IMG/VR virus record: IMGVR_UViG_3300024252_000004
Coordinates: 62,001 to 126,000 of that record
Reading direction: 5' to 3' (one strand)
Length of the DNA stretch: 64,000 nucleotides
The translations under genes were made by a program, and so were the position numbers. This document shows, piece after piece, positions 3,348 through 60,462 of the stretch. The notes under the pieces were generated by a model, which saw nothing but the letters and a program-made list of their open reading frames with translations, searched no databases and was not told where the DNA came from. Each line of letters begins with the position of its first letter. Positions within the stretch are counted from its first letter, which is position 1.

Positions 3348-3540
3348 ATCAGTCACATACATCAAGGCGCAGTGTTGCAATGAAGATTGTTATGCGATTG
3401 ATAATGAGGAGCCATGCTGGGGAGATACACAAGCCATCGATGAAGAATATTACGGTGATGACGATTACTATTGGGTCCATGCTTGCGAAGGTCATCAGGA
3501 CAAATATCATGGCGGAGACTACATAGAGGAGGAGCAATGA
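3340..3540 (+). CDS. Small acidic Cys/His-rich hypothetical protein
   Basis: 66-aa ORF overlapping both neighbours; CCNEDC, CWG, HACEGH. Confidence 0.5.
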   Translation: MSESVTYIKAQCCNEDCYAIDNEEPCWGDTQAIDEEYYGDDDYYWVHACEGHQDKYHGGDYIEEEQ

Positions 3541-42409: not shown

Positions 42410-43771
42410 ATGGATATAGCTGATAAGAAAGTTCTTAGCTGGATGCTTAAAGGTTCCGCAGAACTTAACCGAGTTTCAAGAGTTGTTGATCTAAAGCTGC
42501 TGAAAGAGGCTATGCTTCCACAATACAAGCCCACCTTTGAGAGGGTTTTAGAATATTACTCAAGGTATAAAGCTCCGCCAACTTATGATATCCTTATCGA
42601 GACTTCCACGGATATTGAGGAGCTTCCGGTAATTAAGATCCTACAGGAGACAGATTGCCCAGAAGGCGAAGTAGAGTATTATGTTGATAAGATTAAAGAT
42701 CGATATAACGCTTTTCTGATCAAGAAGGTAATTGAGGACACACAGCTCGCAAGTGAAGACGCAGAGCTTGATGATATCAATGATAACTTCAGAAGGATTG
42801 TATCTAAGGTTGAGAGGCTCAAGAAGGGTTCTGTTTTTTCTGAAGGTAGACTTTCTGAAACTGTGCAGGATCGTGTTGATACATATGAGTACACGAAAGA
42901 GAATCCGAATATGGTGGCAGGTGTTCTTTCTGGATACAGAGAGATTGATGATTATACTTTTGGTATTAGAAACTCAGAGTTCCTGGTTGTCGTAGGCGCA
43001 TCGTCATCTGGTAAGAGCATGCTCATGCTGAACATGGCAATCAATTCGTGGCTTGGATCAAATAAGCCAGACCAGTATCTTGGGCAAGACCTTATTGATG
43101 ACGGGAAAAATGTTGTATACGTTTCTCTTGAAATGAGTAAGTCTCAGCTTGAGGCAAGAGTCGATGCCAATTTGGCACAGATTAGACATAAGGCGCTTAG
43201 TCGAGGTTATTTATCTGAAAACGAAGTGGGTCGTTGGGAGCGCTCTCTTGATTTCCAGAAGATTTACCATAAAAACTTCTACATCATTGATATGCCGAGA
43301 GGCTCAAGGACAATGGATATTGAGGCAAGACTAGAATCTGTATCCGCAGAATTCACGATTGATCTATTATGCATTGACTACCTTGGTATCATGAAGCCAA
43401 ACACAGATTTCGGTCAAGATTGGCTTGAGGTTGGTCATGTTGCGGCAGATGTTCATGAATTGTGTAGAAAGAAGGACTTACCTGTCATTTCTGCTGCACA
43501 GAAGAAAGCTAAGGATAAAAAGGCCAAGAAATCGTTTAATGATGTTGAGGAAATCGGACGCAGTAAAATGATTGGAGATAACTCCAATATTGTGTTGATC
43601 ATCGAATCAAGAGATGAAGAGCATCTTCATGAGGATATGCCGGTACATATTGCAAAGAACAGGGATGGTGCAAAGGGAGTTGTCTACCTCGAAAAGGAAT
43701 TTGAAAAATCGAGAATTAACAATTATCCCGAAGACTGGGTTAAAGATGACGGCGAAGAAAATGAAGTTTAA
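42410..43771 (+). CDS. dnaB: DnaB-like replicative helicase
   Basis: GASSSGKS, VSLEM, CIDYL, SAAQ, IAKNRDG. Confidence 0.9.
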   Translation: MDIADKKVLSWMLKGSAELNRVSRVVDLKLLKEAMLPQYKPTFERVLEYYSRYKAPPTYDILIETSTDIEELPVIKILQETDCPEGEVEYYVDKIKDRYNAFLIKKVIEDTQLASEDAELDDINDNFRRIVSKVERLKKGSVFSEGRLSETVQDRVDTYEYTKENPNMVAGVLSGYREIDDYTFGIRNSEFLVVVGASSSGKSMLMLNMAINSWLGSNKPDQYLGQDLIDDGKNVVYVSLEMSKSQLEARVDANLAQIRHKALSRGYLSENEVGRWERSLDFQKIYHKNFYIIDMPRGSRTMDIEARLESVSAEFTIDLLCIDYLGIMKPNTDFGQDWLEVGHVAADVHELCRKKDLPVISAAQKKAKDKKAKKSFNDVEEIGRSKMIGDNSNIVLIIESRDEEHLHEDMPVHIAKNRDGAKGVVYLEKEFEKSRINNYPEDWVKDDGEENEV

Positions 43772-44054
43772 TTACAAAGCTTTAAAAGCTTTTGATTTTA
43801 TTCACCTACGTTCGAAGAACTGGGGAGCAATCGATTGTGTTGTGATAAAAAACAGTCGAAAAAAAATTACATTTTTAGCAACTGAGCCTTACGAGGACTC
43901 TGATGTTATGGATTTCAGATATTTCACAATGATAGACAAATATGAAGACCTCGAAGGCTTTTTCTTCAAGGAAGTAGAAGACATTTTCATGTTGCTCGGA
44001 AAAACTGATGATCGTATCCTCAGCATGCAATATAGGATATTGGACAATGAGTGA
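43761..44054 (+). CDS. Hypothetical protein
   Basis: Likely start ATG 43761 overlapping the DnaB end. Confidence 0.5.
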   Translation: MKFNYKALKAFDFIHLRSKNWGAIDCVVIKNSRKKITFLATEPYEDSDVMDFRYFTMIDKYEDLEGFFFKEVEDIFMLLGKTDDRILSMQYRILDNE

Positions 44055-44250
44055 AAAAGTTGTAGGAAGAATCAGGAGCGTCACATATTGTGAAGAAGAG
44101 GATGTTCTCGACTTCACAATAAGAGTGACTGACCCCAAGTTTAAGAAGAAGTTACTTAGAGATCTATCTCTTGCCGGTAAGATTAAGCTTGAGGGTGACA
44201 AAATTGTCTATATAGGCGATGAGAATGAGGAGAAAGATGCCGGTATATAA
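44047..44250 (+). CDS. Small hypothetical protein
   Basis: Likely start ATG 44047; coupled in operon. Confidence 0.55.
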   Translation: MSEKVVGRIRSVTYCEEEDVLDFTIRVTDPKFKKKLLRDLSLAGKIKLEGDKIVYIGDENEEKDAGI

Positions 44251-44527
44251 TTTCGTATGTGACAAGTGTGAAGCAGTATCCACTGAAGTTATGAGCATAT
44301 CAAGCTTCATGAAACAGCGGAGCAATCCTGAGGAGTGTTGTGAGTGTTCCGAAGGAAAAGTCTTGGTTTCCTTATCCCCTCCTACGGGCAGGATAGAGAA
44401 AAGGAAAGAAGATATTATACAAGAGATAGAGGACGAAGTACGAGAAATCGTAAAAAAGGTACGTGAGGGTGACGAAGCAGCCATCGAGGATGTGTACGGA
44501 CACCGCGAGAACCCATACAAAAAATGA
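44237..44527 (+). CDS. FmdB-family zinc-ribbon protein
   Basis: MPVYNFVCDKC...CCEC; GAGGAG RBS. Confidence 0.8.
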   Translation: MPVYNFVCDKCEAVSTEVMSISSFMKQRSNPEECCECSEGKVLVSLSPPTGRIEKRKEDIIQEIEDEVREIVKKVREGDEAAIEDVYGHRENPYKK

Positions 44528-46455
44528 CTAACGGAGAACAGATGACATCAGCAGATTCATTACTTGAGCTTGTAAGTTCCCACATGGAGCAGAGTAAGCA
44601 GGAAGCATGGGAAGGTACCCTTGGAGAGTACTTAAAGATGGTGGTCGATGACCCATCTATTCACATGGGAGCACACGAACGAGTTCTTAGAATGATTGAG
44701 AGCCATGGTTTTGAGACGGACGAAGAAGATGAGGTAACTCAGTATAATTTCTTCAAAGATGACCTATTCGGTGTGCAGGATCAGATCGAAGAGTTTATGA
44801 AGTACCTTAGGGCTGCCGCAGCAGGCAGTGAAGTCGGTCGTAGAATCCTTCTTGTATACGGACCAACATCATCCGGCAAGTCCCAACTGGCCATCCTTTT
44901 GAAGAGAGGGCTTGAGGCTTTCTCCAAGACAGAGGACGGTGCATTATACGCATTCTCCGATTCGCCGATGAACGAAGATCCAATGACGGCAATCCCTATG
45001 GAGCTTAGAGGTAGGCTGCGTGAGGAGTATGGTATTCGCGTCCAGGGAGAACTATCTCCCTACATGGAGGCTATTCTTAAAGAGAAGTATGGTGGAAACA
45101 TCATGGAGCTACCGGTTCGTAGGATTTTCATCTCCGAAAGGGCAAGAAACTGCATTGGTACTTTCGTACCTTCCGATAAGAAGAGTCAGGATATCTCTGA
45201 GCTTGTTGGCTCCATTGATCTTAGTAAGATTGGTAAGTACGGCACAGAGTCTGACCCAAGAGCTTACAAGTTCGATGGCGAACTCATGGTTGCTAACCGT
45301 GGCATGATGGAATTTGTTGAGATGCTCAAGGTTGATCAGAAGTTCCTTTACGTTCTTCTCACCCTTGCTCAGGAAAAGAACATCAAGACCGGAAGGTTCC
45401 CGCTTATCTATGCGGACGAATTTGTTCTCGCTCACACTAACGAGACTGAGTACAAGAGATTCCTTGGGAAAGATGAGATGGAGGCACTCCATGATAGAAC
45501 TATTGTTCTACGATTCCCATACAACCTCAGTGTCAATGAGGAAGTAAGGATTTACGAGAAGCTCATTCGTCAGGCGAATTTCAAGGGTGTTCACATTGCA
45601 CCACATACGTTAAGGTGCGCAGCAATGTTCTCTATCCTTTCGAGACTAATTGAATCTGACCACCAGGGGCTTAGCACTCTGAACAAGATGAGACTATACA
45701 ACGGTGATGAGGTTGATGGATTCTCTAAGCACGAAGTACCTAAGTTCAAGGGAGAATTCAAAGATGAAGGAATGGTTGGAGTATCTCCACGATACGTTAT
45801 CAACAGAATCTCTTCCATCCTTGCTTCTGGCAAGAAGGGTTACATCACTCCGGTTGATATCGTAAGATCCCTTAGAGATGGGCTTGAATCTAACCCTAAG
45901 GTTGACGAGAAAGAACAGAACAGATTAGAGGGTATCCTTACTGCTGTAATTGAAGAATACACCAAGATGGCAATGAACGATGTTCAGAAGGCATTCTTCG
46001 TTAACTTCGAGAGCGAGATCGAAAACCTTCTCAAGAACTACCTTGACCATGTTGAGGCATACCTTGACGGTCATATGCTTGAGGATGAGTGGGGCAATGA
46101 TGTTCAGCCAGATGAGAGACTCATGAGAAGCGTCGAAGAGAAGATTAGAATCTCCGACTCTGGCAAGAGATCTTTCAGGCAGGAAGTGTATCGTAAGATG
46201 CTTCGTTCGGCAAGAGATAACGATGGTACCCTTTCCTACAAGGAGCACCCAAGACTCAAGGAAGCGCTTGAGAAGCAGCTTTTTGACGAGAGACGTGACG
46301 TTATCAGAATCACTGTTAGTTCCAGAAACCCAGATGAGGAAGAGCTTAAGAAGATCAATGTTGTCATCGAGACCCTTGCGGACCATCACGGTTACACTGT
46401 CGGAAGTGCCAACGAATTGCTTAGATACGTTAGCTCACTTATGGCAAGAAACTAA
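44524..46455 (+). CDS. prkA: PrkA/YeaG-family AAA+ protein
   Basis: DDLFG, YGPTSSGKS, IGTFVPSDKKSQD, DPRAY, ANRGMMEFVEMLK, HIAPH, GVSPRY. Confidence 0.93.
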   Translation: MTNGEQMTSADSLLELVSSHMEQSKQEAWEGTLGEYLKMVVDDPSIHMGAHERVLRMIESHGFETDEEDEVTQYNFFKDDLFGVQDQIEEFMKYLRAAAAGSEVGRRILLVYGPTSSGKSQLAILLKRGLEAFSKTEDGALYAFSDSPMNEDPMTAIPMELRGRLREEYGIRVQGELSPYMEAILKEKYGGNIMELPVRRIFISERARNCIGTFVPSDKKSQDISELVGSIDLSKIGKYGTESDPRAYKFDGELMVANRGMMEFVEMLKVDQKFLYVLLTLAQEKNIKTGRFPLIYADEFVLAHTNETEYKRFLGKDEMEALHDRTIVLRFPYNLSVNEEVRIYEKLIRQANFKGVHIAPHTLRCAAMFSILSRLIESDHQGLSTLNKMRLYNGDEVDGFSKHEVPKFKGEFKDEGMVGVSPRYVINRISSILASGKKGYITPVDIVRSLRDGLESNPKVDEKEQNRLEGILTAVIEEYTKMAMNDVQKAFFVNFESEIENLLKNYLDHVEAYLDGHMLEDEWGNDVQPDERLMRSVEEKIRISDSGKRSFRQEVYRKMLRSARDNDGTLSYKEHPRLKEALEKQLFDERRDVIRITVSSRNPDEEELKKINVVIETLADHHGYTVGSANELLRYVSSLMARN

Positions 46456-46808
46456 TGTTCTTCGGCATCATGAAGAATGAGGTTACCTCGGCGCCAGTAG
46501 AGGCGCTGAGGGAAGCCCTTACCGATGAGTTTGGTGACGACATTAGATTTTCTCAAGGTGTTCTGCTTGTTGCTTGCTCATTAGAGTTTGCGGCGAATCC
46601 CATGAGGACCAGAATCGTGTATGCAAAAGATCCTGATGGTGAGTTTGACGCGATGGTTAAAGAGGCTGTTGAGCGGATTATGTTTGAAGTGAAAAGCTCA
46701 GAGACAGATCTTTCTGATTATGAATTCTCGCTTTCTTGTTTGCCGTGTGAAGAGGCAGATTCCCTTTCGATTGGATTCGTACTTTGGGTTAATGGATGTT
46801 GTAAGTAA
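46455..46808 (+). CDS. Hypothetical protein
   Basis: TAATG-coupled to PrkA. Confidence 0.55.
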   Translation: MFFGIMKNEVTSAPVEALREALTDEFGDDIRFSQGVLLVACSLEFAANPMRTRIVYAKDPDGEFDAMVKEAVERIMFEVKSSETDLSDYEFSLSCLPCEEADSLSIGFVLWVNGCCK

Positions 46809-46820
46809 CATGGGAAGATT

Positions 46821-47171
46821 ATGAATATATTGAAAATATATGCTATGATAAAACAAAGGCTGGAGAATTTAAAACTTTCCGAGGATTTCTTTACGCTTGA
46901 TAATGTTCCTTTGGAGGCGCTCCCTATATATCTAGGGCAAAGTTTCAATGGATATAGTAATGAGGATGGAAGCTTTTCTTTCCAAAATAGCTTCATTGAT
47001 ATCATAGAACTTGGGCAACCATTTAGTACAGATGAAACCGAAGAGGAGACTGTGAATCGTTTGGTATCTTTTCTCAAAGAGTACCGTGCAGAACTTGGGC
47101 AAGACCCGTTTCAGTTGGTTATATCTGTTAAAGATACGAAAGATTGTTACGGAATCTTAGCTGTACATTAA
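46821..47171 (+). CDS. Hypothetical protein
   Basis: 116-aa in-operon ORF. Confidence 0.55.
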   Translation: MNILKIYAMIKQRLENLKLSEDFFTLDNVPLEALPIYLGQSFNGYSNEDGSFSFQNSFIDIIELGQPFSTDETEEETVNRLVSFLKEYRAELGQDPFQLVISVKDTKDCYGILAVH

Positions 47172-47184
47172 ACCAGGAGAAGTA

Positions 47185-47295
47185 ATGACTATTATAATTA
47201 ATTATGGAAAAAGTACATTTATAGAGTCTGATGCTTATGAAGATGAAAATCAAAACCATGATACAATAAGAATAGTGTCTGGTATGGAGGAGTAA
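47185..47295 (+). CDS. 36-aa small protein (MTIIINYGKSTFIESDAYEDENQNHDTIRIVSGMEE)
   Basis: Hand-translated; GGAG RBS upstream; fills the gap before YeaH; not in the ORF track. Confidence 0.45.
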   Translation: MTIIINYGKSTFIESDAYEDENQNHDTIRIVSGMEE

Positions 47296-47296
47296 A

Positions 47297-48466
47297 ATGT
47301 CTGATAGTCTTTCTGATATTTGGAAACTGAAGAAACGTGGTAAAAGAGATTCTGATCGACATGAAGAGCTTGTCAAAAGAGCAATCAGAAAGCATGGGCG
47401 AGACGTAATCACAGAGTATAACATCATTCGTTCTTCAGGCTCCAAGAAAGTTAAGATTCCTGTAAGGTTTCTTGATAAGCATACGTTCAAATATGGAAAA
47501 TGGAAAGATGACTCTCAGGTTGGTCAAGGTCAGGACGTAGTCCCCGGAAAAAACTATGAAGTTAAGAAGGGACAAGCTGCTCCTGGCGGCCCAGGAGACC
47601 AAGAGGGCGAGAGAATTTTTGAAGCTGAAATCTCTGTAGATGAGTTGGTCAACATGCTAATGGAAGAGTTAAATCTTCCATGGATGGAGCCAAACAAGTC
47701 CAGTCAGATTGAAGTAGTTCATGAAGAAGTTTCGTCAATCGATAGAAAGGGAATCTTCCCAAATCTTGACATCAAAAGAACTCTCCTTCAGAACATCAAA
47801 AGGAATGCTGCGCTTGGAAATCCACACGTTGGAGATTTTCATAACGAAGACCTCAGATATAAGGTGTGGGAAGAGGAGACTGAGTACGTCTCAAATGCTG
47901 CGGTCTATATCATGATGGATAGATCTGGCTCTATGGATGACAAGAAGACCTATATTGCTAAGAGCTTCTACTTCTGGATGGTTCAGTTTCTAAAAAGACG
48001 TTATCAAAATGTTGAGTTAATCTTCATTGCTCATGATACAACTGCATTTGAAACTACAGAAGAAGAGTTCTTTACGATTTCGGCAAGCGGTGGAACTAAG
48101 TGCAGTTCTGCATTCAAGTTCGCTCTTGATCATATCAAGAATAACCATCCGCCAGATGATTGGAACAATTACGTTTTTGAGTTCAGCGATGGCGACAACT
48201 GGATGCAGGATAACAGAGAGTGCGTAGGTCTTGTAAGGGAGCTATTGCCTTTATGCACTGCAATCGGGTATGGTGAAATTGTGCCGGACGAGCAAGCGGA
48301 GCTACCTTGGTTCAAGGAAGAAGATAAGCTTTACAACGTGTTCAATAATGAGATTTCAAGAACGCGATTTGTATCCTTAAGAGTTAACTCTAAAGATGGC
48401 GTTTTCGATGCTCTAAAGCAATTCTTTAACGTTAATGGTGTGTCAAAAAAGGCTGAAAAGAAATGA
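47297..48466 (+). CDS. yeaH: YeaH/YhbH-family (DUF444) vWA protein
   Basis: RDSDRH, PGDQEG, EDLRY, MMDRSGSM, FIAHDT, GGTKCSSA, EFSDGDNW. Confidence 0.93.
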   Translation: MSDSLSDIWKLKKRGKRDSDRHEELVKRAIRKHGRDVITEYNIIRSSGSKKVKIPVRFLDKHTFKYGKWKDDSQVGQGQDVVPGKNYEVKKGQAAPGGPGDQEGERIFEAEISVDELVNMLMEELNLPWMEPNKSSQIEVVHEEVSSIDRKGIFPNLDIKRTLLQNIKRNAALGNPHVGDFHNEDLRYKVWEEETEYVSNAAVYIMMDRSGSMDDKKTYIAKSFYFWMVQFLKRRYQNVELIFIAHDTTAFETTEEEFFTISASGGTKCSSAFKFALDHIKNNHPPDDWNNYVFEFSDGDNWMQDNRECVGLVRELLPLCTAIGYGEIVPDEQAELPWFKEEDKLYNVFNNEISRTRFVSLRVNSKDGVFDALKQFFNVNGVSKKAEKK

Positions 48467-51036
48467 AAAAAAGATTAATCGAAGTAGACAAATGGTGTCA
48501 GAAGAAGTGTGATGAGATGGGCGTAGATTATTTTCCAATCAATTGGGAAGTTGTGCCTGAAGAGGTCATGCTTGAGGTAATGAGCTATGGTCTTCCGACC
48601 AGAGCACGACACTGGACATACGGTCAGAGTTACAAATACCAGAAGCTTAATGGTGAAATGGGTATGTCAAAGGTTTACGAGCTAATCCTTAACAACAATC
48701 CATCTTATGCTTTCCTTCTTGATACCAACCCTGACATTGCACAGATTATGGTCATCGCTCACTGTGTCCATGAGGATGCTAAAATTATTACTTTGGATGG
48801 AGTAAAGCCCATCTCTGAAGTAAAAAAGGGCGATAAAGTATTTACACATAAAGGTAGAATTTCTACTGTTAACTGGTGTAAAGAGACTGCAAGAAAAAAA
48901 GAAATTACTGAATTGAAAGTAAGGGGTTCCGATGAGGTTTATAGGTTTACATCTGATCATAAGATTTATGTAGAAACTGATGTTGGCCCATCTTGGGTAA
49001 AAGTTTCTGAAATAAGGGAAGATGATAGAATCATTTACCCTAAGGCTTCTCAGAACGAGGAGTCTGCTCTCGAAGAGATTTTAATTGAAATCGAAAATAT
49101 TCAGAGTAATGATAGGCTGTTTAGGAAAAAAGCTTTCCATGAAAGCAATGGATATACTTTAAAATTAAATGAAGAATCCGGAAGGATGATCGGGCTATAT
49201 ATTGCTGAAGGCTATCTTAGCGGAACACAAGTTCATTTTGCGATGCACAAGGATGAAGACGATTATCATGCAGCAATTTCAAATGCAATTAATCAGTTAT
49301 CTCCGAAACTTCCTGTACATGTATCCAAAAGAGAGCGTGATAATTCTGGCATTGTTCATTTTTCTGACAAATGGATTGGAAAATGGCTTGAAGAAAGCTG
49401 TGGGAAAGGTTGTGAGAACAAGAAGATACCTGATTTTGTATTTGCAAACAATGTTCCTCTTGAGTTTAAAAAGGGAATTGTAAGAGGGCTTTTCGAAGGT
49501 GATGGTTATTTTGATAATGAAAATAGAAGCTCTTCTTTTTCTACCACAAGCGATCTGCTTGCAAATCAGTTAAAATTTCTTCTGAATTCATTTGGAATTT
49601 TTTCATCTATTTCTTCAAGAAACAGGAAATCTTTTGATATAAAGGGGGAAAGAAAAACTTCTTATGAATTGGTTTTAAGTGGCGAAGACAACTTGGAGTT
49701 ATATAACATAGTTGGATATGAGACTGAATATGCTCCGACCAGAACTTGGTCTTTCTCTGCAAAGAAAGATGAATATATAGCTGGACAAATCGAATGGGTT
49801 CGCTCATTCTCTACAGAAAAGATTCAAAGTTTTTGGGACATGGAAGTGGAAGGAGATCATAGCTTTGCGCTATATGGCGGAATTGTAGCTCATAACTGTT
49901 ACGGACACAGCGCATTCTTCAAGAATAACTACCTATTCAAGCAGACAGACAGGAAGATGGTTTACCATGCTGCTGAACGTGCTGCAAGAATCGAAGGCTA
50001 TATTGAGAGGTATGGTTTAGAAAGAGTTGAACGCATCATGGATATTGGTCTCTCCGTTGAGAAGAATATTGATTGGCATAAAGGTTTATTCCGTGAGAAA
50101 TACCCTGGCAGAAGAAAGGTGGTCAAGAGTCGTAAGATTGGTGAATTCGAAGATGTACTTGGAATCAAAAGTCCAGAGAGAAAAGAGGTAACGGTTAACA
50201 CGAAGTTCCCACCTGCAAAAGAGATTGATATCAACTGGTTCTTGATGACTTACTCTTCTAAGCTTGAAGATTGGGAGCGTGATGTCCTCTCTATTATCCG
50301 AGAAGAATCCTTTTACTTCTACCCTCAGTACATCACAAAGATTATGAACGAAGGCTTTGCAAGCTATATTCATGCAGAACTCATGTATGTCATGGGCGAG
50401 GAGATGCTTTCCGCAGCAGAGTATATTGATTTCGTTAAGATTCATGAGAGAGTTGTTCAGCCAGGACGTGATCCATTCAATATGAACCCATACTTCTTAG
50501 GCTTTACGATTTTCAACGACATTAAGAAAAGATGGGATGAGCTATACGAGAAAGGTGAGTCAACCATTACAGGTTTTCAGAAGATTCTTGAGGTATGCGA
50601 GGAAGAAGATGATGTATCATTCTTGAACATCTACCTCACTCAGGAGATTGTTGATGAGCTTAAGATGTTCACCTATGTTCAGAGAAGGGACCCGAGAAGT
50701 AAAAACCAATACGTTCAGGTTCAGAGCAATAAGGTTAAGGACATTGTTGAGTCAATGACCAGCAAGCTTCATAACTACAGAGTTCCTATGATTGCGATTA
50801 CTAACGTAACATCTATGAGTCTTGAGCTTGAGCATGGAAGCCCAGAGATTGGAACGATTGCTTATAAGCATCTTCCAAAGGTTATGGAGTATCTATATGA
50901 GGCATGGGGCAATGTGATTGACCTGAAGACGTGGGACACGTCAGGCAATCCATTCCACTTCACTTTCGATGAGGAAGGTTTCAGTGATGTCGATCCAGAA
51001 AAAGGTCTCACAATTATTAGAAGGAAACAAAAGTAA
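48463..51036 (+). CDS. spoVR: SpoVR/YcgB-family protein containing an intein
   Basis: GLPTRARHW, YELILN, AH|CYGHSAFFKNN after splicing, TKIMNEGFASY, NPYFLGF. Confidence 0.92.
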   Translation: MKKRLIEVDKWCQKKCDEMGVDYFPINWEVVPEEVMLEVMSYGLPTRARHWTYGQSYKYQKLNGEMGMSKVYELILNNNPSYAFLLDTNPDIAQIMVIAHCVHEDAKIITLDGVKPISEVKKGDKVFTHKGRISTVNWCKETARKKEITELKVRGSDEVYRFTSDHKIYVETDVGPSWVKVSEIREDDRIIYPKASQNEESALEEILIEIENIQSNDRLFRKKAFHESNGYTLKLNEESGRMIGLYIAEGYLSGTQVHFAMHKDEDDYHAAISNAINQLSPKLPVHVSKRERDNSGIVHFSDKWIGKWLEESCGKGCENKKIPDFVFANNVPLEFKKGIVRGLFEGDGYFDNENRSSSFSTTSDLLANQLKFLLNSFGIFSSISSRNRKSFDIKGERKTSYELVLSGEDNLELYNIVGYETEYAPTRTWSFSAKKDEYIAGQIEWVRSFSTEKIQSFWDMEVEGDHSFALYGGIVAHNCYGHSAFFKNNYLFKQTDRKMVYHAAERAARIEGYIERYGLERVERIMDIGLSVEKNIDWHKGLFREKYPGRRKVVKSRKIGEFEDVLGIKSPERKEVTVNTKFPPAKEIDINWFLMTYSSKLEDWERDVLSIIREESFYFYPQYITKIMNEGFASYIHAELMYVMGEEMLSAAEYIDFVKIHERVVQPGRDPFNMNPYFLGFTIFNDIKKRWDELYEKGESTITGFQKILEVCEEEDDVSFLNIYLTQEIVDELKMFTYVQRRDPRSKNQYVQVQSNKVKDIVESMTSKLHNYRVPMIAITNVTSMSLELEHGSPEIGTIAYKHLPKVMEYLYEAWGNVIDLKTWDTSGNPFHFTFDEEGFSDVDPEKGLTIIRRKQK
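48763..49896 (+). mobile_element. Intein (378 aa) with LAGLIDADG homing endonuclease in SpoVR
   Basis: Starts CVHEDAKII, ends IVAHN followed by Cys; IGLYIAEG and RGLFEGDG blocks. Confidence 0.92.
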
Positions 51037-51539
51037 TGACTGAACCTGTTGTAGATTTTGCATATCAATTATCCGTATCGCGTGAACGAATTGAGAAAAG
51101 AGTTTTTCAGAACCTCCGCAATATCTCAGAAGAGCTATTGATGAAGGATGAATTCGTAGGATCCCTTATTGTATTTGGAGTTTTTAAAACCCAAGTCGAC
51201 GGGATGAGACAATTCGGAGGAAGCAAGCTTGAAAAATACATCAATGTTGTTGGTGCTCACGAAGAGGAGTTCATTAACATGGTGCGGAGTGGTGATGATG
51301 GAGCAATTGTTATCAGCGATAGTGGGCAGATACTAGGATCTGGTATATATTTAACCGTGGACGATCCCACCTTAGACATCCCCGAGGGGGCAGGCACCAG
51401 ACATATCTCTGCTGCCTCATTCTCCAAGCGGGATGATATATTAGCTACCTTTACATTGTCCGAAGAGACGCGCATCGTGCGAAAATGGAAAGACGGTGCT
51501 GTGAACGAACAGTTCGATCCTTCAGACGATCAAGAGTAG
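51036..51539 (+). CDS. Stand-alone diadenylate cyclase (DAC/DisA_N) domain protein
   Basis: DDGAIVI (DGA), GAGTRHISAA (RHR-like), LSEET motifs. Confidence 0.82.
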   Translation: MTEPVVDFAYQLSVSRERIEKRVFQNLRNISEELLMKDEFVGSLIVFGVFKTQVDGMRQFGGSKLEKYINVVGAHEEEFINMVRSGDDGAIVISDSGQILGSGIYLTVDDPTLDIPEGAGTRHISAASFSKRDDILATFTLSEETRIVRKWKDGAVNEQFDPSDDQE

Positions 51540-51562
51540 TTGACCTTATTTTTAAGGAAAGG

Positions 51563-51586
51563 GCCGCCCAAGTTGGGTGGCTTTTT
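51563..51586 (+). terminator. Intrinsic terminator after the DAC gene
   Basis: GCCGCCCA-AGT-TGGGTGGC followed by TTTTT. Confidence 0.7.
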
Positions 51587-51806
51587 CAACTTTTATTAGA
51601 GAAGAATAGTCAGATTTGTAGAGACAAAAACATATCCAAATTGTTTGATTCGCAAAAAGATTTGGATTTGAATATATGAAAACAGATTCCTTAAAGGGCC
51701 TTGCAACCAGCTTTTCATATACCCAAACTCTATTAATCTTGGCAGTGTAAGTGCTACAATGAGCACGATACCAATGAGAATTTTATGATGTAGGAGTACT
51801 GTTTTA

Positions 51807-54800
51807 ATGTTTATTCAAAATATCTCTCAAGAAGTATGGGGCGGAGAAGCTGGTAAGTATAGGCTTCGTGATTCCGAAGGACAACCCATCGATCTAACAC
51901 CTGAAGACACCTGTTTGAGAGTCGCAAAAGGGTTAGCATCACTTGAGCCAAAACCAGAAGAATGGGAAGTTGAGTTTTCCAGAATTCTATTAGAAGGTAA
52001 GTTCGCAGGTGGCGGACGTATTATGGCCAATGTCGGCGCTGGCGACCTCAAGCGAGACGCCAGCCCGATTAACTGTACGGTGCTCAGGCAGATCCCTGAC
52101 TCGATGGATGGCATCATGCAGACCGCCAAAGAATCTGCGATGACACTGCGCACAGGCGCTGGTGTGGGCTATGATTTCAGCCCAATTAGGCCAAGCGGCG
52201 CGTATGTATTTGGCGCAGGAGCAGAGACTTCTGGCGTCATTTCTTTTATGAAAATCTTCGATGCAACGTGCAGCACAGTTATGAGCGGCGGTGGCAGACG
52301 TGGAGCCCAAATGGGTTGCCTCGACATTCAGCATCCAGAGATTGAGAATTTCATCACTTGTAAAAGAGAAGATGGCGTTCTTAGATATTTTAACTTATCT
52401 GTTTTAATCACAGATGCTTTCATGACGGCTGTTAGAGATGATGCCATGTGGAAGCTATGGTTCTGGGAGCGTTGCGAGAAATGTGACATAGAGGAAATTG
52501 GTGCAGATGAGGTTGCAGTGATGAAAGCTGGAGATATCCCTTTCAGATATCCTGAATACGATTACTTCAGTTATGCAGCAGATCACACTGAAGTCCTTAG
52601 CGGTAACTGCGAAGTAGGAACTATCTTTAAGAAGAGAGTATTCAAGGTGCTTAGAGCCGTTGAACTCTTTGATAAGATTATGACATCAACATACAATTTC
52701 GCCGAGCCTGGATTCATTCTTATCGATAGGGTGAACAGAGATAATATCCTTTGGTTCTGTGAAGTTATTAGAGCTACGAATCCATGTGTACCTTCTGATA
52801 CCTGGGTTCATACAGAAGAAGGCCCGAAGCAGGTTTCCGATCTTATAGGTCAAGAATGCACCTTGATGGTGAACGGAAAGCCATATCAATCAGAAGGATT
52901 TTTTAAAACCGGATATAAATCGGTTTTGAATTTAGAAACCAAAGAAGGCTTCAAATTAAGATTAACTCCTAATCATAAAGTTATGGTAGTAAGCTCCAAT
53001 AATGGTGATAAAATTATTTCCAATTGGAAAGAAGCAGGCGAAATTGAGATTGGTGATAAAGTTATTCTTCATGATCATAGTGATTCTGCTTACTGGTTAG
53101 GAACAGACAAAATGAATGGAGTCTACTCTGTAGATCAGGGATACCTGATGGGGCTACTCGTTGGGGACGGAACGCTGAAGAAAGATTCTGCTATCCTGTC
53201 CGTTTGGAGTTCTGACAATGAAAATGGTTATGAGTCTATTATGTCTCGTGTAAATATGTCGATAAGACACCTTAAGAAAAGAGCAGATTTTAAGGGTTGG
53301 CACAAAATAGCTGGCCGAAATGAGTATAGGCTTAAGTTGTCTGGAATAAGAGATTTGGCGCATGAATTTGGAATGAGCAATCAAAACAAGTTTATTACTC
53401 CTAAAATGGAGAAAGCATCTCATGCCTTTTCTGCCGGGTTCTTAAGGGGGCTTTTTGATGCAGATGGCTCGGTCCAAGGCGATCAAAGCAAAGGAGTTTC
53501 TGTAAGGCTTGCTCAAAGTAACTTAGAGACCTTGGAAGCTGTGCAAAGAATGCTTCTTAGATTTGGAATCGTATCTAAGATTTACAAATTCAGGCGAGAA
53601 AGTGGAGAGTCACTTTTGCCTAACGGGAAAGGTGGAAAGAAACTTTATAAGACAAAAGCTCAGCACGAATTAGTTATTAGCAAAAGTAATTTAAAAACTT
53701 TTGAGAGATTGATTGGCTTTGCTGATGACACTAAGCATTCTAAATTAGTAAACTTATTAAGTGACTACAAAAGAGAATTAAACAAAGAAAGTTACGCAGT
53801 AACGATATCATCAATTAGTGACGGAGGCATTTGCGACGTTTATGACGTACAGGTTCCAGGTATAAACGCTTTTGATGCAAACGGCATTTATGTTCATAAT
53901 TGTGGCGAACAGCCTTTACCTGCCAATGCAAGTTGCCTATTGGCTTCAATGATTTTAGCTCCATATGTGATGAATAAATTTGCGGATGATTCCTTTTTTG
54001 ATTGGGAGGCTTTCGAAGTAGATATTGCTGTCGCTACAAGGATGATGGACAACGTTGTTGAGATCAACAACCTGCCTCTGCCTGAAATGAGAGAGCAGAT
54101 TCTCCAGAAGAGAAGGCATGGCTTAGGCTTCACAGGTCTTGGCACTGTATTTAACATGCTCGGCATGTCTTATGGTGATGATGCTTCTCAGGCGTTCGCA
54201 GATAAGATTGCATACACGATTGCAAAAGTATCTCTATTTATGAACATGGAGCTTGCGCAAGAGAAAGGACATGCTCCCATTTTCGACACGATAGTGTCCA
54301 GACAGAACGCTATTGATTCAGGATATATGAAGAGGTTGTTATCAACCTTTGATGACGATTTAAGGCATGGATTAGAGCAGGAGATTCTTGAGCATGGTCT
54401 CAGATTCTCTCACGCTACCAGCATTGCACCAACAGGAACCATGAGTTTAACTTGGGGTAACAACTGTAGCAATGGTGTTGAGCCGAGCTTCACTGATGAG
54501 TACGCAAGAAACTTCAGGCAGCATGGAAAGAAGACGAAGGTTCAGGAAATCGTAAGAAGTCTTGAATACCATCTATGGATAGAGATGTATGGTGACAGAG
54601 AGCTACCAAGTCATTGGAGGGTTTCCAATGACCTATCTGTCGAAGATCATATCAACATCCAGGCAAAGATTCAGAAGTGGGTTGACTCTGCCGTATCTAA
54701 GACGGCAAATGTTCCTACTGATTACCCATTCGAGGATTTCAAAAAGATCTACATGATGGGATGGGAGAAGGGGCTTAAGGGCATCACCACCTTCAGGTAT

Positions 54801-54989
54801 AATCCTGAGGCGTTTTCAGGTGTCCTTGTTCGCAAAGAGGATCTCGAAAATACGAAATACGTTTTCATCCTCGCAGATAATGAAGAAATAACAGTATCCG
54901 GAAGTGATACAATTGAGTACGATGGTGAGCTTCACAATGCGGCCAATTTGTTTGATGCGCTGAAAGAAGGCATGTATGGGGATATGTAA
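51807..54989 (+). CDS. nrdJ: Class II (B12-dependent) ribonucleotide reductase NrdJa with intein
   Basis: GGRIMAN, INC, GGRRGAQM, EPG, TNP|CGEQPL, RHGLGFTG, IAPTGT, KGITTFR. Confidence 0.93.
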   Translation: MFIQNISQEVWGGEAGKYRLRDSEGQPIDLTPEDTCLRVAKGLASLEPKPEEWEVEFSRILLEGKFAGGGRIMANVGAGDLKRDASPINCTVLRQIPDSMDGIMQTAKESAMTLRTGAGVGYDFSPIRPSGAYVFGAGAETSGVISFMKIFDATCSTVMSGGGRRGAQMGCLDIQHPEIENFITCKREDGVLRYFNLSVLITDAFMTAVRDDAMWKLWFWERCEKCDIEEIGADEVAVMKAGDIPFRYPEYDYFSYAADHTEVLSGNCEVGTIFKKRVFKVLRAVELFDKIMTSTYNFAEPGFILIDRVNRDNILWFCEVIRATNPCVPSDTWVHTEEGPKQVSDLIGQECTLMVNGKPYQSEGFFKTGYKSVLNLETKEGFKLRLTPNHKVMVVSSNNGDKIISNWKEAGEIEIGDKVILHDHSDSAYWLGTDKMNGVYSVDQGYLMGLLVGDGTLKKDSAILSVWSSDNENGYESIMSRVNMSIRHLKKRADFKGWHKIAGRNEYRLKLSGIRDLAHEFGMSNQNKFITPKMEKASHAFSAGFLRGLFDADGSVQGDQSKGVSVRLAQSNLETLEAVQRMLLRFGIVSKIYKFRRESGESLLPNGKGGKKLYKTKAQHELVISKSNLKTFERLIGFADDTKHSKLVNLLSDYKRELNKESYAVTISSISDGGICDVYDVQVPGINAFDANGIYVHNCGEQPLPANASCLLASMILAPYVMNKFADDSFFDWEAFEVDIAVATRMMDNVVEINNLPLPEMREQILQKRRHGLGFTGLGTVFNMLGMSYGDDASQAFADKIAYTIAKVSLFMNMELAQEKGHAPIFDTIVSRQNAIDSGYMKRLLSTFDDDLRHGLEQEILEHGLRFSHATSIAPTGTMSLTWGNNCSNGVEPSFTDEYARNFRQHGKKTKVQEIVRSLEYHLWIEMYGDRELPSHWRVSNDLSVEDHINIQAKIQKWVDSAVSKTANVPTDYPFEDFKKIYMMGWEKGLKGITTFRYNPEAFSGVLVRKEDLENTKYVFILADNEEITVSGSDTIEYDGELHNAANLFDALKEGMYGDM
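52785..53900 (+). mobile_element. Intein (372 aa) with LAGLIDADG endonuclease at the RNR NP-C-GEQ active-site cysteine
   Basis: Starts CVPSDTWV, ends IYVHN followed by Cys; GLLVGDG and RGLFDADG blocks. Confidence 0.93.
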
Positions 54990-58418: not shown

Positions 58419-58719
58419 TATCAAATATGAGAAGACAATCACCGAAGCTGTAGAGGAGATCAATGAAAGAAAGACCTCCGGCAAAAAGGTGCATCCCTTA
58501 ACGGAAGAGGGCATGAAGGCTATTGATGTGGCGAACATGATAGTGGGAACCATCATGAAAAGAAACCAACCTGATGTTAGTTTCTTCAAGGTTTACATGA
58601 ATAGCACGAATGACAGGTTGGGTAAAATGTCAGGCAAGAAAAAAGCGGCCAACGAGGGCCGCAAATCTCTTAGAAGGAAGCGTTCAAATCGTGTAAACGA
58701 TAGTAAGGACTCCTCCTGA
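58405..58719 (+). CDS. Hypothetical basic protein
   Basis: 104-aa ORF overlapping the upstream stop. Confidence 0.55.
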   Translation: MAEHDIKYEKTITEAVEEINERKTSGKKVHPLTEEGMKAIDVANMIVGTIMKRNQPDVSFFKVYMNSTNDRLGKMSGKKKAANEGRKSLRRKRSNRVNDSKDSS

Positions 58720-59595
58720 ATCTGGAATGTCCGTAAGAACGACAGCGTTTCTATTTTCGTCGTATCTCCAGTGATCATATTCAGTAGAGTTGCTTCCATC
58801 TTCGCTTAAGAACACTTTAAGCTTATCAATCTGAAGAGGAAGGTGATCAAGGTGCCATACCTCATTAAGGGTTGGCAAGTGCTCCTTAGGTCTATCAAGA
58901 ACGGCAGACCAATCTTCATCACAAAGATCTACGACAGTTTCTGATACATCAAGGTATCCTACGCCCAACTGAGCAGAGTCACAACGATTACCTTCATAGG
59001 TAGCAACGATTGCCGACTCGGTAACCTCAAAGGGGCCTGATTTTACAAGGTCCATTAGGGTGTTGTATTCTGTTGGAGAGACAGAGGACTGGTCGGGTTC
59101 ATCGCTGATGTATACAATAAGGAGATCAGCTTCTTCTCTTTCAAAACCAGAGTTATCCCACGCTACAGTCTCAAGAGCACTGTCGAGCCCTGCCTCTCTG
59201 TAATGATTTTCAAGAAGAGAGGTCAAAGACATAAGCTTCAGGAGAGCATCAGGATCGTTGTAATCAACCCAGCCATAGATTTCTCCAGCGGAGTCGGTAG
59301 ATTTGATTCCTACTCTCCACTTGAGGTCAGTGAATTCGGGACCAATAAGGATACTATATATCTCTGGCATAGTTGCAGCTAAGGTTTCCCAGTCATCACT
59401 CATTGAACCTGATTCGTCAACGATGAATAGAATATCTACTGCTTGATCATAGACCACACCAGTTTGAACAATAGGTTCTCCGTAGATGCTTACGTCTTCA
59501 GTGTAATTGGCTACAACGCCAATGTCTGAAGAGCAAGAGGTTAGTGTCATTGCTGCACATAGTGCTAATCCATATAGCTTTAGTTTGCCGAACAT
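58684..59595 (-). CDS. vWA (MIDAS) domain lipoprotein
   Basis: Lipobox-like MTLTSC; DILFIVDESGSMS; VYISDEPDQS. Confidence 0.8.
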   Translation of the reverse strand: MFGKLKLYGLALCAAMTLTSCSSDIGVVANYTEDVSIYGEPIVQTGVVYDQAVDILFIVDESGSMSDDWETLAATMPEIYSILIGPEFTDLKWRVGIKSTDSAGEIYGWVDYNDPDALLKLMSLTSLLENHYREAGLDSALETVAWDNSGFEREEADLLIVYISDEPDQSSVSPTEYNTLMDLVKSGPFEVTESAIVATYEGNRCDSAQLGVGYLDVSETVVDLCDEDWSAVLDRPKEHLPTLNEVWHLDHLPLQIDKLKVFLSEDGSNSTEYDHWRYDENRNAVVLTDIPDSGGVLTIVYTI

Positions 59596-59607
59596 ATTAA
59601 CTCCGTA

Positions 59608-60462
59608 TCATTTTATGTTGTTTCGCTCAAGAAATATCAAAATGTCAGGCATTCCGATTCCTAACCCTCCGTATGAGAACATGACAGAGTTTTGACCAAC
59701 TCTATCTCTCACCGAAGAAGCAAAGGAAATACCAACAAGTTCTCCTCTTTTGTTGTAGATGGGACTACCACTATGTCCCGGTTGTAACATTTCGGATACC
59801 ATAAGGGCACCCTGTTCTCCTTCACCTAAACTGCCTAACTGAGAACGAGGAACATATCCCGAAAAGAATGTTTCCAAAATGATTGGTGCATTAGAATTAG
59901 GTGCTCCAACGATGTACAGTTTTTCAGCAACATCTAATTTTGTGTCTTTATCGATTTTAACTATTGGGTGCGAGCCATCTGCTTTTAATAGACACAAATC
60001 GTTAGCAGGATCTTTATCCACGACAGTCATCTGCATGTCTGGTTTTCCATCATATCTGAACGAAGCCTGAGAGTCATTTAACTTTTCCCCTACAAAAGTA
60101 ATACCCAAAATAGGCATGCTACAAATATGGTCATTTGATAAAAAGTAAGTTTCATCTGCTTTTTTATCATAAGCGATGCCAAAGGCAGTGCCACTACTCT
60201 GCACCTGTGAGCCGCTCAATGTATAGATGACCACAACAGGCTCCACCATTCTTTTGTAGTTTTTCTTAACAGACACTTCTTCAGTTTTGCTATCTGAGGA
60301 GTAAAGTTCGGCTATTGGCCTATCGTTCACCATGATCATGTTTTGGGGACTTGCTACGAAGTAACATAGTAGTGTCAGTGCCAAAAACAGAGCGAGGAAT
60401 TTTGCGTTTTTCAATTTGATTCCTTTATATTTTTTCCACGTTTTCTTATTCGGTATGTTCAA
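59608..60462 (-). CDS. Membrane-anchored trypsin-like serine protease
   Basis: N-terminal hydrophobic helix; triad SNDHIC (H), ANDLC (D), PGHSGSP (S). Confidence 0.85.
   Translation of the reverse strand: MNIPNKKTWKKYKGIKLKNAKFLALFLALTLLCYFVASPQNMIMVNDRPIAELYSSDSKTEEVSVKKNYKRMVEPVVVIYTLSGSQVQSSGTAFGIAYDKKADETYFLSNDHICSMPILGITFVGEKLNDSQASFRYDGKPDMQMTVVDKDPANDLCLLKADGSHPIVKIDKDTKLDVAEKLYIVGAPNSNAPIILETFFSGYVPRSQLGSLGEGEQGALMVSEMLQPGHSGSPIYNKRGELVGISFASSVRDRVGQNSVMFSYGGLGIGMPDILIFLERNNIK

What the first reader, a model, noticed from the sequence alone, without database searches (positions are those of the whole stretch)
51036..51539. Stand-alone phage diadenylate cyclase
Seen: 167-aa protein with DGA, GTRH(I)SAA and SEET motifs and no TM, HhH or other regulatory domain; the canonical RHR is RHI. 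Known: DAC/DisA_N domains make c-di-AMP, which controls K+/osmolyte homeostasis, cell wall and sporulation; cyclic dinucleotides also act in anti-phage signalling. Inference: an unregulated viral cyclase could change host c-di-AMP or produce a decoy nucleotide.
Basis: partly seen in the sequence, partly recalled or inferred. Interest (0 to 1): 0.7.

Follow-up and report, generated by a model that had tools for sequence, protein, structure and literature searches.

The report
Phage diadenylate cyclase in PrkA operon
A 395-kb uncultured marine jumbo phage carries a small, single-domain enzyme of the family that makes the bacterial signal c-di-AMP. It sits at the end of a phage copy of the PrkA-YeaH-SpoVR stress operon, an arrangement conserved across a whole phage lineage and not described in the papers I could search.

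Summary
Window 51036-51539 (+) is a 167-aa ORF with DGA, GTRHISAA and SEET motifs and no transmembrane or extra domain. It passes the Pfam DAC threshold (44 bits against 27), and all 50 best Foldseek matches of its model in the PDB are diadenylate cyclases.

The 'RHI' deviation is not a defect. It is invariant in 26 aligned relatives (48-76% identical), and DacZ-like cyclases also lack the third Arg.

The new point is the context. The gene is the last cistron of PrkA - two small ORFs - DUF444/YeaH - SpoVR (with an intein) - DAC, followed by a strong terminator hairpin. SpoVR-then-DAC on one strand is kept in every related contig that reaches far enough upstream, down to 41% DAC identity. These contigs are 300-420-kb seawater jumbo phages. 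Cultured phages that carry the PrkA trio (phiYS40, RsoM2USA) have no DAC. Two motif-based scans of 185,579 species genomes found no cellular member of this subfamily.

Best reading: an active minimal cyclase that makes c-di-AMP (or a close dinucleotide) in the infected cell, as part of a host-takeover cassette. An anti-defence decoy role is the main rival. The product, the host and the target are all untested. I class it as a new variant of a known kind, of moderate to high interest.

The parts
44524..46455 (+). PrkA/YeaG-type AAA+ 'serine protein kinase' (643 aa), first recognisable gene of the module
   Evidence: Pfam AAA_PrkA 1.1e-110 and PrkA 2.7e-70. Nearest ESM Atlas clusters are Pseudomonadota YeaG-type.
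46455..46808 (+). Small ORF (117 aa) of unknown function between PrkA and DUF444
   Evidence: ORF list. No Pfam match.
46821..47171 (+). Small ORF (116 aa) of unknown function between PrkA and DUF444
   Evidence: ORF list. No Pfam match.
47297..48466 (+). DUF444 / YeaH-like protein (389 aa)
   Evidence: Pfam DUF444 1e-88.
48463..51036 (+). SpoVR/YcgB-like protein (857 aa) interrupted by a LAGLIDADG intein (roughly nt 48766-49881)
   Evidence: Pfam SpoVR 2.8e-94 in two stretches, plus Intein_splicing, Hint_2 and LAGLIDADG_3. Intein-less orthologues of 460-480 aa occur in L004, L005 and others.
51021..51026 (+). Shine-Dalgarno-like GAAGGA, 9 nt upstream of the DAC start codon and inside the end of spoVR
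   Evidence: Read directly from the sequence.
51036..51539 (+). Minimal diadenylate cyclase (167 aa). Its ATG overlaps the spoVR stop codon (TAATG).
   Evidence: Pfam DAC 44.2 bits against a cut-off of 27. Foldseek top 50 PDB matches are all DACs. Motifs are invariant.
51297..51305 (+). DGA motif (D88-G89-A90)
   Evidence: Aligned to the DGA of solved CdaA chains. D88 and G89 are invariant and A90 is kept in at least 90% of 26 relatives.
51393..51407 (+). GTRHI motif (G120-I124), the counterpart of the canonical GTRHR
51459..51470 (+). SEET motif (S142-T145)
51557..51587 (+). Intrinsic-terminator-like hairpin (14 pairs, 7 G-C) plus a T-run, 18 nt after the DAC stop codon
   Evidence: It is the strongest of the 10 terminator-like sites found in 43500-52500.

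Best explanation
The ORF encodes a soluble, catalytically competent, minimal diadenylate cyclase of a clade found so far only on phage or phage-like contigs. It consists of a DacZ-like catalytic domain without the PK_C sensor domain, preceded by a conserved N-terminal motif and helix. It is transcribed and translationally coupled as the last gene of the phage's PrkA-YeaH-SpoVR operon. By inference, two copies condense two ATP into 3'3'-c-di-AMP (or a very similar cyclic dinucleotide) in the infected bacterium. Together with the PrkA/YeaH/SpoVR stress module, this signal would reprogram host stress, osmotic or starvation physiology for the phage's benefit. What is shown: domain identity, fold, conserved catalytic motifs, purifying selection, operon position and lineage-wide synteny. 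What is inferred: activity, the product, and any functional link to the PrkA module or to host targets.
For: - Family identity: Pfam DAC is over threshold. The best NCBIfam match is the C-terminal DAC half of DacZ, positions 121-268 of 270.
- Fold: all 50 best Foldseek PDB matches are DacM, CdaA or DisA, TM 0.5-0.6. AFDB and Atlas matches are also DAC.
- Catalytic motifs: D88, G89, T121, R122, H123, S142 and E143 are invariant, and A90 and E144 are kept in at least 90%, in 26 relatives of 48-76% identity. They align to the DGA / TRH / SEE of solved CdaA chains.
- The third Arg is dispensable in this branch: DacZ-like cyclases carry I/T/Y/V/M/N there. DacZ and CdaZ enzymes are reported active (PMC6741144). 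PanS, a minimal DAC with DGF/GGR motifs, is active and constitutive (10.64898/2026.08.10.743927).
- Selection: pS 0.76-0.92 against pN 0.14-0.32.
- Operon: the start codon overlaps the spoVR stop, an SD-like GAAGGA lies upstream, and a terminator follows.
- Synteny: PrkA-DUF444-SpoVR-DAC is in the same order and strand in every related locus that reaches far enough upstream, that is 17 IMG/VR loci plus JGI, NCBI and Logan contigs. This holds down to 41% DAC identity.
- Copy number: one DAC per genome in three further 94-100% complete 317-335-kb relatives.
Against: - No enzymatic data exist, and no RNA run could be listed.
- The host is unknown, so it is unknown whether it uses c-di-AMP.
- No c-di-AMP riboswitch, DarA/PstA or RCK_C receptor was found in the 395-kb phage genome.
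- The co-fold of SpoVR with DAC gave no answer.
- Related stand-alone DACs also occur in phage-like contigs without SpoVR, and PrkA-trio phages exist without a DAC. The two are therefore not obligate partners.
- In many relatives the next gene, a sigma-70-like factor, overlaps the DAC stop, so the association could simply reflect shared timing of expression.
- The structure model is only moderate (pLDDT 72).
Confidence: 0.5

Rival explanations
1. Anti-defence decoy supplier. The phage cyclase constitutively makes c-di-AMP or cUA to keep Panoptes/Panoptoo(PanDA)-type guard effectors switched off while the phage's own sponges or nucleases deplete immune nucleotides. Alternatively it jams host receptors of cyclic-dinucleotide immune signals.
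For: Bacterial minimal DACs of about 150 aa (PanS) constitutively make c-di-AMP or 3'3'-cUA, which represses the membrane effector PanE. Phage Acb4 sponges that bind c-di-AMP trigger that system, which is found mainly in Pseudomonadota (10.64898/2026.08.10.743927; PMC13640721). The phage protein is likewise a minimal DAC with no sensor domain. The phage's PrkA is most like Pseudomonadota YeaG (a lead only), and the two Pseudomonadota controls, E. coli and Caulobacter, have no DAC of their own. Another stand-alone DAC relative sits in a phage-like contig beside RNA-repair genes, which are typical counter-defence genes.
Against: The gene keeps a fixed place in a stress-module operon among replication and nucleotide-metabolism genes, not in a variable anti-defence region. 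No sponge was identified here. c-di-AMP can also activate immune effectors such as TIR-SAVED (10.1101/2025.06.19.660554), which would harm the phage. The PADLOC scan gave no match, but that library predates PanS.
Confidence: 0.2
2. The fold is the same but the product differs. The enzyme makes an asymmetric or non-adenine dinucleotide (for example 3'3'-cUA) or a linear pApA-like product that serves a phage-specific receptor.
For: PanS shows that DAC domains can make cUA by remodelling the lid loop between the DGA and RHR motifs (10.64898/2026.08.10.743927). In the HMMER alignment the phage lid is 2 residues longer than in B. subtilis CdaA. The residue before DGA and the third RHR residue differ from CdaA and DisA.
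Against: The lid length equals that of DacZ-like cyclases, with no gaps in the alignment, and that class is reported to make c-di-AMP (PMC6741144). The D-to-R spacing is 34 residues, against 37 reported for RePanS and 33 for TmDisA, so there is no large extension.
Confidence: 0.15
3. Non-catalytic nucleotide-binding subunit. The DAC domain has become an ATP or c-di-AMP sensor that regulates SpoVR, PrkA or the downstream sigma-like factor.
For: The gene is translationally coupled to spoVR. The canonical third Arg is lost. The conserved N-terminal motif (D7, Q11) lies outside the catalytic domain and could be a docking peptide.
Against: Every residue known to be needed for catalysis (D, G, T-R-H, S-E-E) is invariant or nearly so across deep divergence, which is unusual for a pseudoenzyme. 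The co-fold with SpoVR gave no support, though also no evidence against. Relatives exist without SpoVR.
Confidence: 0.07

Closest known systems
DacZ / CdaZ class diadenylate cyclases (Haloferax volcanii DacZ, Methanocaldococcus CdaZ and bacterial relatives)
   Same: This is the best-scoring curated model (NF041371, 53 bits, aligned to its DAC half and the linker helix). DGA-to-TRH spacing is the same and the third 'RHR' position is also non-Arg. Atlas structural neighbours carry DacZ_A or DacZ_P domains.
   Different: The protein lacks the N-terminal PK_C-like sensor domain of about 120 aa and scores far below the family cut-off of 430. In the tree, the short stand-alone DACs are separated from DacZ-like and fused DACs by a branch with SH-aLRT 99. 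It is encoded by a phage of bacteria rather than by an archaeon.
PanS / mDAC of the Panoptoo (PanDA) anti-phage system
   Same: Both are minimal, single-domain, soluble DACs of 150-170 aa with no sensor domain. PanS is constitutively active (10.64898/2026.08.10.743927; PMC13640721).
   Different: There is no 2TM-beta-barrel effector next to the phage gene; its neighbours are SpoVR and RNR or a sigma-like factor. It is phage-encoded, not in a bacterial defence island. It has GTRH where PanS has GGR. Direct sequence kinship was not tested because no PanS sequence was available to the tools.
CdaA/DacA, DisA, CdaS and CdaM (canonical bacterial DACs)
   Same: They share the catalytic fold and the DGA, TRH and SEE(T) motifs.
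   Different: The phage protein has none of their accessory parts: the three TM helices of CdaA, the HhH and linker domains of DisA, or the CdaS autoinhibitory helices. NCBIfam scores are 16 bits or less against cut-offs of 189-225. The third motif residue is Ile rather than Arg.
Phage-borne PrkA-DUF444-SpoVR trios (Thermus phages phiYS40 and TMA, Ralstonia jumbo phage RsoM2USA)
   Same: These are also phage copies of the conserved bacterial YeaG-YeaH-YcgB stress module (PMC8504454).
   Different: Those phages have no DAC domain anywhere in their genomes. Gene order differs in phiYS40. PrkA identity to them is only 27-36%.

Membership tests
DAC domain family (Pfam PF02457, DisA_N) | Profile match above the curated gathering score | tested here: met
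   44.2 bits against 27, residues 37-155 covering profile positions 8-118 of 119.
DAC domain family (Pfam PF02457, DisA_N) | DGA motif | tested here: met
   D88-G89-A90 aligns to the DGA of solved CdaA chains. D88 and G89 are invariant and A90 is kept in at least 90% of relatives.
DAC domain family (Pfam PF02457, DisA_N) | RHR motif (GTRHRAA) | tested here: inconclusive
   G120-T121-R122-H123 are invariant, but the third residue is Ile, also invariant. That position is non-Arg throughout DacZ-like relatives. Only the triple RHR-to-AAA mutant has been shown to be inactive (PMC3328451).
DAC domain family (Pfam PF02457, DisA_N) | SEE(T) acidic/Ser motif after the RHR strand | tested here: met
   S142-E143-E144-T145 aligns to SEET of CdaA. 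S142 and E143 are invariant.
DAC domain family (Pfam PF02457, DisA_N) | DAC fold | tested here: met
   AF2 model pLDDT 72. The top 50 Foldseek PDB hits are all DacM, CdaA or DisA, probability 1.00, TM 0.50-0.59. The Atlas model gives TM 0.75-0.84 to DAC clusters.
DAC domain family (Pfam PF02457, DisA_N) | Synthesis of c-di-AMP from ATP by a head-to-head dimer | not testable with these tools
   This needs expression, LC-MS and a determination of the oligomeric state.
DacZ/CdaZ class | N-terminal PK_C-like domain fused to the DAC domain; full-length match to NF041371 | tested here: not met
   Only positions 121-268 of 270 are matched, 53 bits against a cut-off of 430. The protein is 167 aa with about 36 residues before the DAC domain.
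PanS/mDAC of Panoptoo/PanDA | Operonic 2TM-beta-barrel (PanE) effector; location in a bacterial defence island | tested here: not met
   The neighbours are SpoVR upstream and RNR or a sigma-70-like gene downstream in all loci. The record is a 395-kb virus. PADLOC gave no match, but the library is from 2023.
CdaA/DacA | Three N-terminal transmembrane helices | tested here: not met
   Maximum 19-residue hydropathy is 1.22. There is no TIGR00159 match.
DisA | C-terminal linker and HhH DNA-binding domains (about 360 aa) | tested here: not met
   The protein is 167 aa. NF010009 scores 16 bits against a cut-off of 201, over the DAC part only.
PrkA-YeaH-SpoVR (YeaG-YeaH-YcgB) module (for the flanking genes) | Three adjacent genes with AAA_PrkA+PrkA, DUF444 and SpoVR domains | tested here: met
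   E-values are 1e-110, 1e-88 and 3e-94. The order is conserved in relatives.

The most novel reading that the evidence does not exclude
The phage cyclase is a counter-counter-defence. By making its own c-di-AMP or cUA, a jumbo phage that also depletes immune nucleotides keeps guard systems of the Panoptes/Panoptoo type silent, since their effectors are held off by a constitutive decoy dinucleotide. A second reading is equally unexcluded: c-di-AMP is the missing small-molecule ligand of the enigmatic PrkA-YeaH-SpoVR module, and the phage carries synthase and machine as one cassette.
Probability: 0.2. Interest if true: 0.85.

Novelty: new variant of a known kind. Interest (0 to 1): 0.62.

Why it matters
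c-di-AMP is an 'essential poison' that controls potassium, osmolytes, the cell wall and starvation responses. Since 2025-26 it is also known as a decoy signal in anti-phage guard systems. My full-text searches of the held paper library found no description of a virus-encoded diadenylate cyclase.

Here a whole lineage of abundant marine jumbo phages conserves one. It is always wired to the PrkA-YeaH-SpoVR module, whose biochemical role has been an open question for decades.

If the enzyme is active, it gives a directly testable handle on three questions:
- how large phages rewrite host second-messenger signalling;
- whether phages can neutralise decoy-nucleotide immunity;
- whether the PrkA module is connected to c-di-AMP.

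Tried and rejected
**Searches that led nowhere**
- Nearest phages: megablast and tblastn of the locus and the DAC against 50,697 GenBank phage records gave no match. DnaB is at most 26% identical to any cultured phage.
- Phage type: no T4 gp23, T4 portal or Terminase_6C Pfam match and no psbA. The phage type and host therefore stay unknown. 'Relatives' cannot be drawn for a virus record.
- Cellular origin: two motif-based scans of 185,579 species genomes found no relative of this subfamily. A broader alignment was too divergent to scan with.
- c-di-AMP partners in the phage genome: the whole 395 kb scanned with Rfam gave only tRNAs, one group I intron and a tmRNA, with no ydaO or other riboswitch. 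No DarA/PstA and no RCK_C.
- DHH-DHHA1 protein: one exists and is conserved in relatives. It belongs to a generic phage DHH family (phrog_4771), so I did not count it as a c-di-AMP phosphodiesterase.
- Physical coupling: the co-fold of intein-less SpoVR with its own DAC returned 'no answer'. It is evidence neither for nor against binding.
- Expression: no RNA run could be listed.
- P0124, a 313-aa apparent fusion, is TPR-like repeats joined to a truncated DAC and not a SpoVR-DAC fusion.

**Ideas rejected**
- 'RHI means inactive': contradicted by DacZ-like relatives, which also lack the third Arg.
- 'Archaeal virus': suggested by the DacZ likeness and the Atlas taxa, but contradicted by the tmRNA, the LysM-lysozyme and DnaB helicase and the sigma-70-like gene of relatives.
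- 'Chance ORF or passenger gene': contradicted by purifying selection and lineage-wide synteny.
Full report
**1. The observation**

Window 51036-51539 (+) is an ATG-initiated ORF of 167 aa. Its motifs are:
- DGA at residues 88-90;
- GTRHISAA at 120-127;
- SEET at 142-145.

There is no hydrophobic segment: the maximum 19-residue Kyte-Doolittle mean is 1.22. The only Pfam domain is DAC (PF02457), residues 37-155, E=1.7e-11, 44.2 bits against a gathering score of 27.

HMMER alignments to solved CdaA chains pair D88-G89-A90 with DGA, T121-R122-H123 with TRH, I124 with the third Arg, and S142-T145 with SEET.

An AlphaFold2 model built on 26 homologues has pLDDT 72 and pTM 0.73. All 50 best Foldseek PDB matches are diadenylate cyclases (DacM 7dg0, CdaA 6hvm/8c4j, DisA 4yxm/3c1y), with probability 1.00 and TM 0.50-0.59. 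AFDB clusters and the ESM Atlas give only DAC neighbours.

**2. It is a real, selected gene of a phage**

The window is bases 62001-126000 of a 395,127-bp IMG/VR virus record that CheckV rates 100% complete. The genome has 43.8% G+C, 44 tRNAs and a tmRNA.

Logan contigs of at least 20 seawater or marine DNA runs hold the locus.

A search of 5.8 billion proteins returned 192 homologues. All of the best 120 listed are 133-215 aa and carry only the DAC domain.

In an alignment of 26 homologues (48-76% identical), the following are invariant: D88, G89, G120, T121, R122, H123, I124, S142 and E143, plus the N-terminal D7, Q11, E20 and K21.

Against relatives, synonymous sites are saturated (pS 0.76-0.92) while pN is 0.14-0.32. 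This indicates strong purifying selection.

**3. 'RHI' is the norm for this branch, not a lesion**

The best curated model is DacZ (NF041371, 53 bits). It matches only the DAC half plus the linker helix, positions 121-268 of 270, far below the cut-off of 430. DisA and CdaS score 16 bits or less.

More distant representatives that do match DacZ over their full length (130-226 bits) read G[TAS]RH[I/T/Y/V/M/N] at the same columns, with the same spacing from DGA.

DacZ and CdaZ enzymes are reported to make c-di-AMP (PMC6741144). The only mutational evidence I could read for RHR is the triple AAA mutant of M. tuberculosis DisA (PMC3328451). PanS, which has DGF and GGR motifs, is active (10.64898/2026.08.10.743927).

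In a quick maximum-likelihood tree of 63 DAC sequences, the short stand-alone DACs fall on one side of a branch with SH-aLRT 99, and DacZ-like and fused DACs fall on the other. The SpoVR-linked phage sequences cluster together with support 92-98.

**4. The context**

Pfam annotation of the neighbours gives this order on the + strand:
- DnaB-like helicase, 42410-43771;
- PrkA, 44524-46455;
- two unannotated ORFs of 117 and 116 aa;
- DUF444/YeaH, 47297-48466;
- SpoVR, 48463-51036, split by a LAGLIDADG intein;
- the DAC, 51036-51539;
- class II ribonucleotide reductase (also with an intein), a TSCPD protein, PIN-PhoH and LysM-lysozyme.

The DAC start codon shares its A with the spoVR stop (TAATG), and GAAGGA lies 9 nt upstream. 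A hairpin of 14 pairs followed by a T-run lies 18 nt after the DAC stop. It is the strongest terminator-like site in the 9-kb region scanned. The DAC is therefore the last cistron of a prkA-yeaH-spoVR string.

**5. The arrangement is lineage-wide**

Seventeen IMG/VR loci, plus JGI, Logan and NCBI contigs of up to 405 kb, encode relatives of 44-100% identity. In every locus that extends far enough upstream, PrkA, DUF444, SpoVR and DAC follow each other on the same strand, usually after DnaB and before RNR, PhoH and lysozyme.

A representative at 41% identity (P0125, motif GTRHK) still lies downstream of SpoVR, separated by two small ORFs, and upstream of a sigma factor, RNR and PhoH.

Three further genomes of 317-335 kb, 94-100% complete, one of them with terminal repeats, have exactly one DAC each.

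In many relatives a small sigma-70-like gene overlaps the DAC stop. The window and its closest relative L005 lack that gene.

The association is not universal in either direction:
- Thermus phage phiYS40 and Ralstonia jumbo phage RsoM2USA carry the PrkA/DUF444/SpoVR trio but no DAC domain anywhere.
- Other stand-alone DAC relatives (35-42% identity) lie in phage-like contigs without SpoVR. One is beside a CCA-adding enzyme and an RNA ligase, another beside an amidase.
- A 268-aa relative sits next to an aconitase-family gene and looks cellular.

Two motif-based scans of one genome from each of 185,579 prokaryote species found no member of the phage subfamily. Those scans are limited to the patterns used. 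No GenBank phage record has a homologue at E<=1e-3.

**6. Host and partners**

The following point to a bacterial host despite the DacZ-like catalytic domain: a standard one-piece tmRNA, the sigma-70-like genes of relatives, LysM-lysozyme and DnaB. The PrkA is most like Pseudomonadota YeaG-type clusters in the Atlas, which is a lead only.

Among 14 control genomes, E. coli and Caulobacter lack DAC. SpoVR occurs in E. coli, B. subtilis, Thermus and Haloferax. The module and the cyclase therefore co-occur in some cells but not in all.

The phage genome holds no known c-di-AMP riboswitch, DarA or RCK_C domain. It does hold a conserved 294-aa DHH-DHHA1 phosphoesterase. This is the fold of small c-di-AMP/pApA hydrolases (my own knowledge), but the protein belongs to a generic phage family.

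A co-fold of SpoVR with DAC returned no answer. No RNA-seq run could be listed.

**7. Mechanism**

Shown:
- a DAC fold with all core catalytic residues;
- no sensor domain, but a conserved 36-residue N-terminal motif and helix;
- operon coupling to PrkA-YeaH-SpoVR;
- deep conservation.

Inferred: the protein dimerises, possibly through the N-terminal helix. It converts 2 ATP to 3'3'-c-di-AMP during the phase of infection in which replication and nucleotide-metabolism genes are expressed.

What that signal would do depends on the host:
- In a host that uses c-di-AMP, it would shut potassium and osmolyte uptake and alter envelope and starvation signalling (established roles of c-di-AMP).
- In a host without c-di-AMP, the targets would have to be phage proteins or immune receptors.

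The main rival is anti-defence use. In 2026, bacterial minimal DACs (PanS) were shown to make c-di-AMP or cUA constitutively. This holds a membrane effector off, and the system fires when phage sponges such as Acb4 remove the signal (10.64898/2026.08.10.743927; PMC13640721). A phage-made supply would blind such guards.

Against that rival stands the gene's fixed place in a stress-module operon. In addition, c-di-AMP can activate TIR-SAVED effectors (10.1101/2025.06.19.660554).

Two further rivals are a different product and a non-catalytic sensor role. Both are less likely, given the DacZ-like lid length and the invariant catalytic residues.

**8. Comparison and novelty**

The protein is a member of the DAC domain family. 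The HMM, fold, DGA, TRH and SEET tests are met; the third Arg is not met, but it is variable in the nearest class.

It is not a member of:
- DacZ/CdaZ (no PK_C domain);
- CdaA (no TM helices);
- DisA (no HhH domain);
- CdaS;
- PanS systems (no PanE partner, not in a defence island).

My full-text searches for phage-encoded diadenylate cyclases and for jumbo-phage PrkA/SpoVR plus a cyclase found no description of this. The two 2026 PanS preprints surveyed bacterial genomes and proteomes only. JGI's automatic name for the homologues is 'DisA with diadenylate cyclase activity'.

I therefore class it as a new variant of a known kind: a minimal DAC clade seen so far only in phages, with a new and conserved genomic partnership.

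**9. Verdict**

Interest is 0.62. My probability that the protein is an active cyclic-dinucleotide synthase is about 0.8. Confidence in the specific host-takeover-with-PrkA-module reading is 0.5.

Noticed in passing
window 48463-51036 and 51807-54989: Both SpoVR and the class II ribonucleotide reductase are interrupted by LAGLIDADG inteins. In relatives the SpoVR intein is present (828-884-aa proteins in L002, L011, L016, L022) or absent (460-480 aa). PrkA of L011 is 1009 aa, which suggests a further insertion.
   Followed up: partly
L026:1411-2295 (G000:C1 about 340816-341700, outside the window): A 294-aa DHH-DHHA1 phosphoesterase (phrog_4771) is conserved at 38-43% identity in three related near-complete jumbo phage genomes. 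It could hydrolyse c-di-AMP or pApA, but the family is generic in phages.
   Followed up: partly
window 154-23383: A long same-strand run of ORFs includes a group 1 glycosyltransferase, a NeuB-type nonulosonic acid synthase (3471-4379) and two GDP-mannose-dehydratase/epimerase paralogues (17557-18531, 20018-20995). This looks like a phage-encoded glycan or sialic-acid-like sugar biosynthesis cluster.
   Followed up: partly
window 32843-34342: A tubulin/FtsZ-family protein with a TubZ-like C-terminal domain (499 aa), the kind of cytoskeletal protein known from some jumbo phages.
   Followed up: no
G000:C1 159306-325615 (outside the window): There are 44 tRNA genes, among them a suppressor-like anticodon CTA that ARAGORN calls 'Pyl'. 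There is also a group I intron (L035:3270-3730) and a phage-encoded one-piece tmRNA (L041:1513-1915).
   Followed up: no
window 51036-51143 (DAC residues 1-36): The N-terminal stretch outside the DAC domain has invariant D7, Q11, E20 and K21 (consensus VDFS[FY]Q ... EK), although residues 1-15 are modelled with low confidence. It is unexplained and could be a docking or dimerisation element.
   Followed up: partly
L004:8533-9084; L002:8555-9091; L023:2389-3057: In most relatives a small sigma-70-like gene (regions 2 and 4) directly overlaps the DAC stop codon. It is missing in the window and in L005, where a terminator follows the DAC instead.
   Followed up: partly
window 58684-60462 (- strand): A VWA-domain protein and a trypsin-like serine peptidase lie on the opposite strand just downstream of the lysozyme. 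The peptidase is conserved at this position in relatives L002 and L004.
   Followed up: no
P0124 (metagenomic protein, 313 aa): TPR-like repeats are joined to the C-terminal 100 residues of a clade-type DAC. This is either a real fusion or an assembly chimera.
   Followed up: partly
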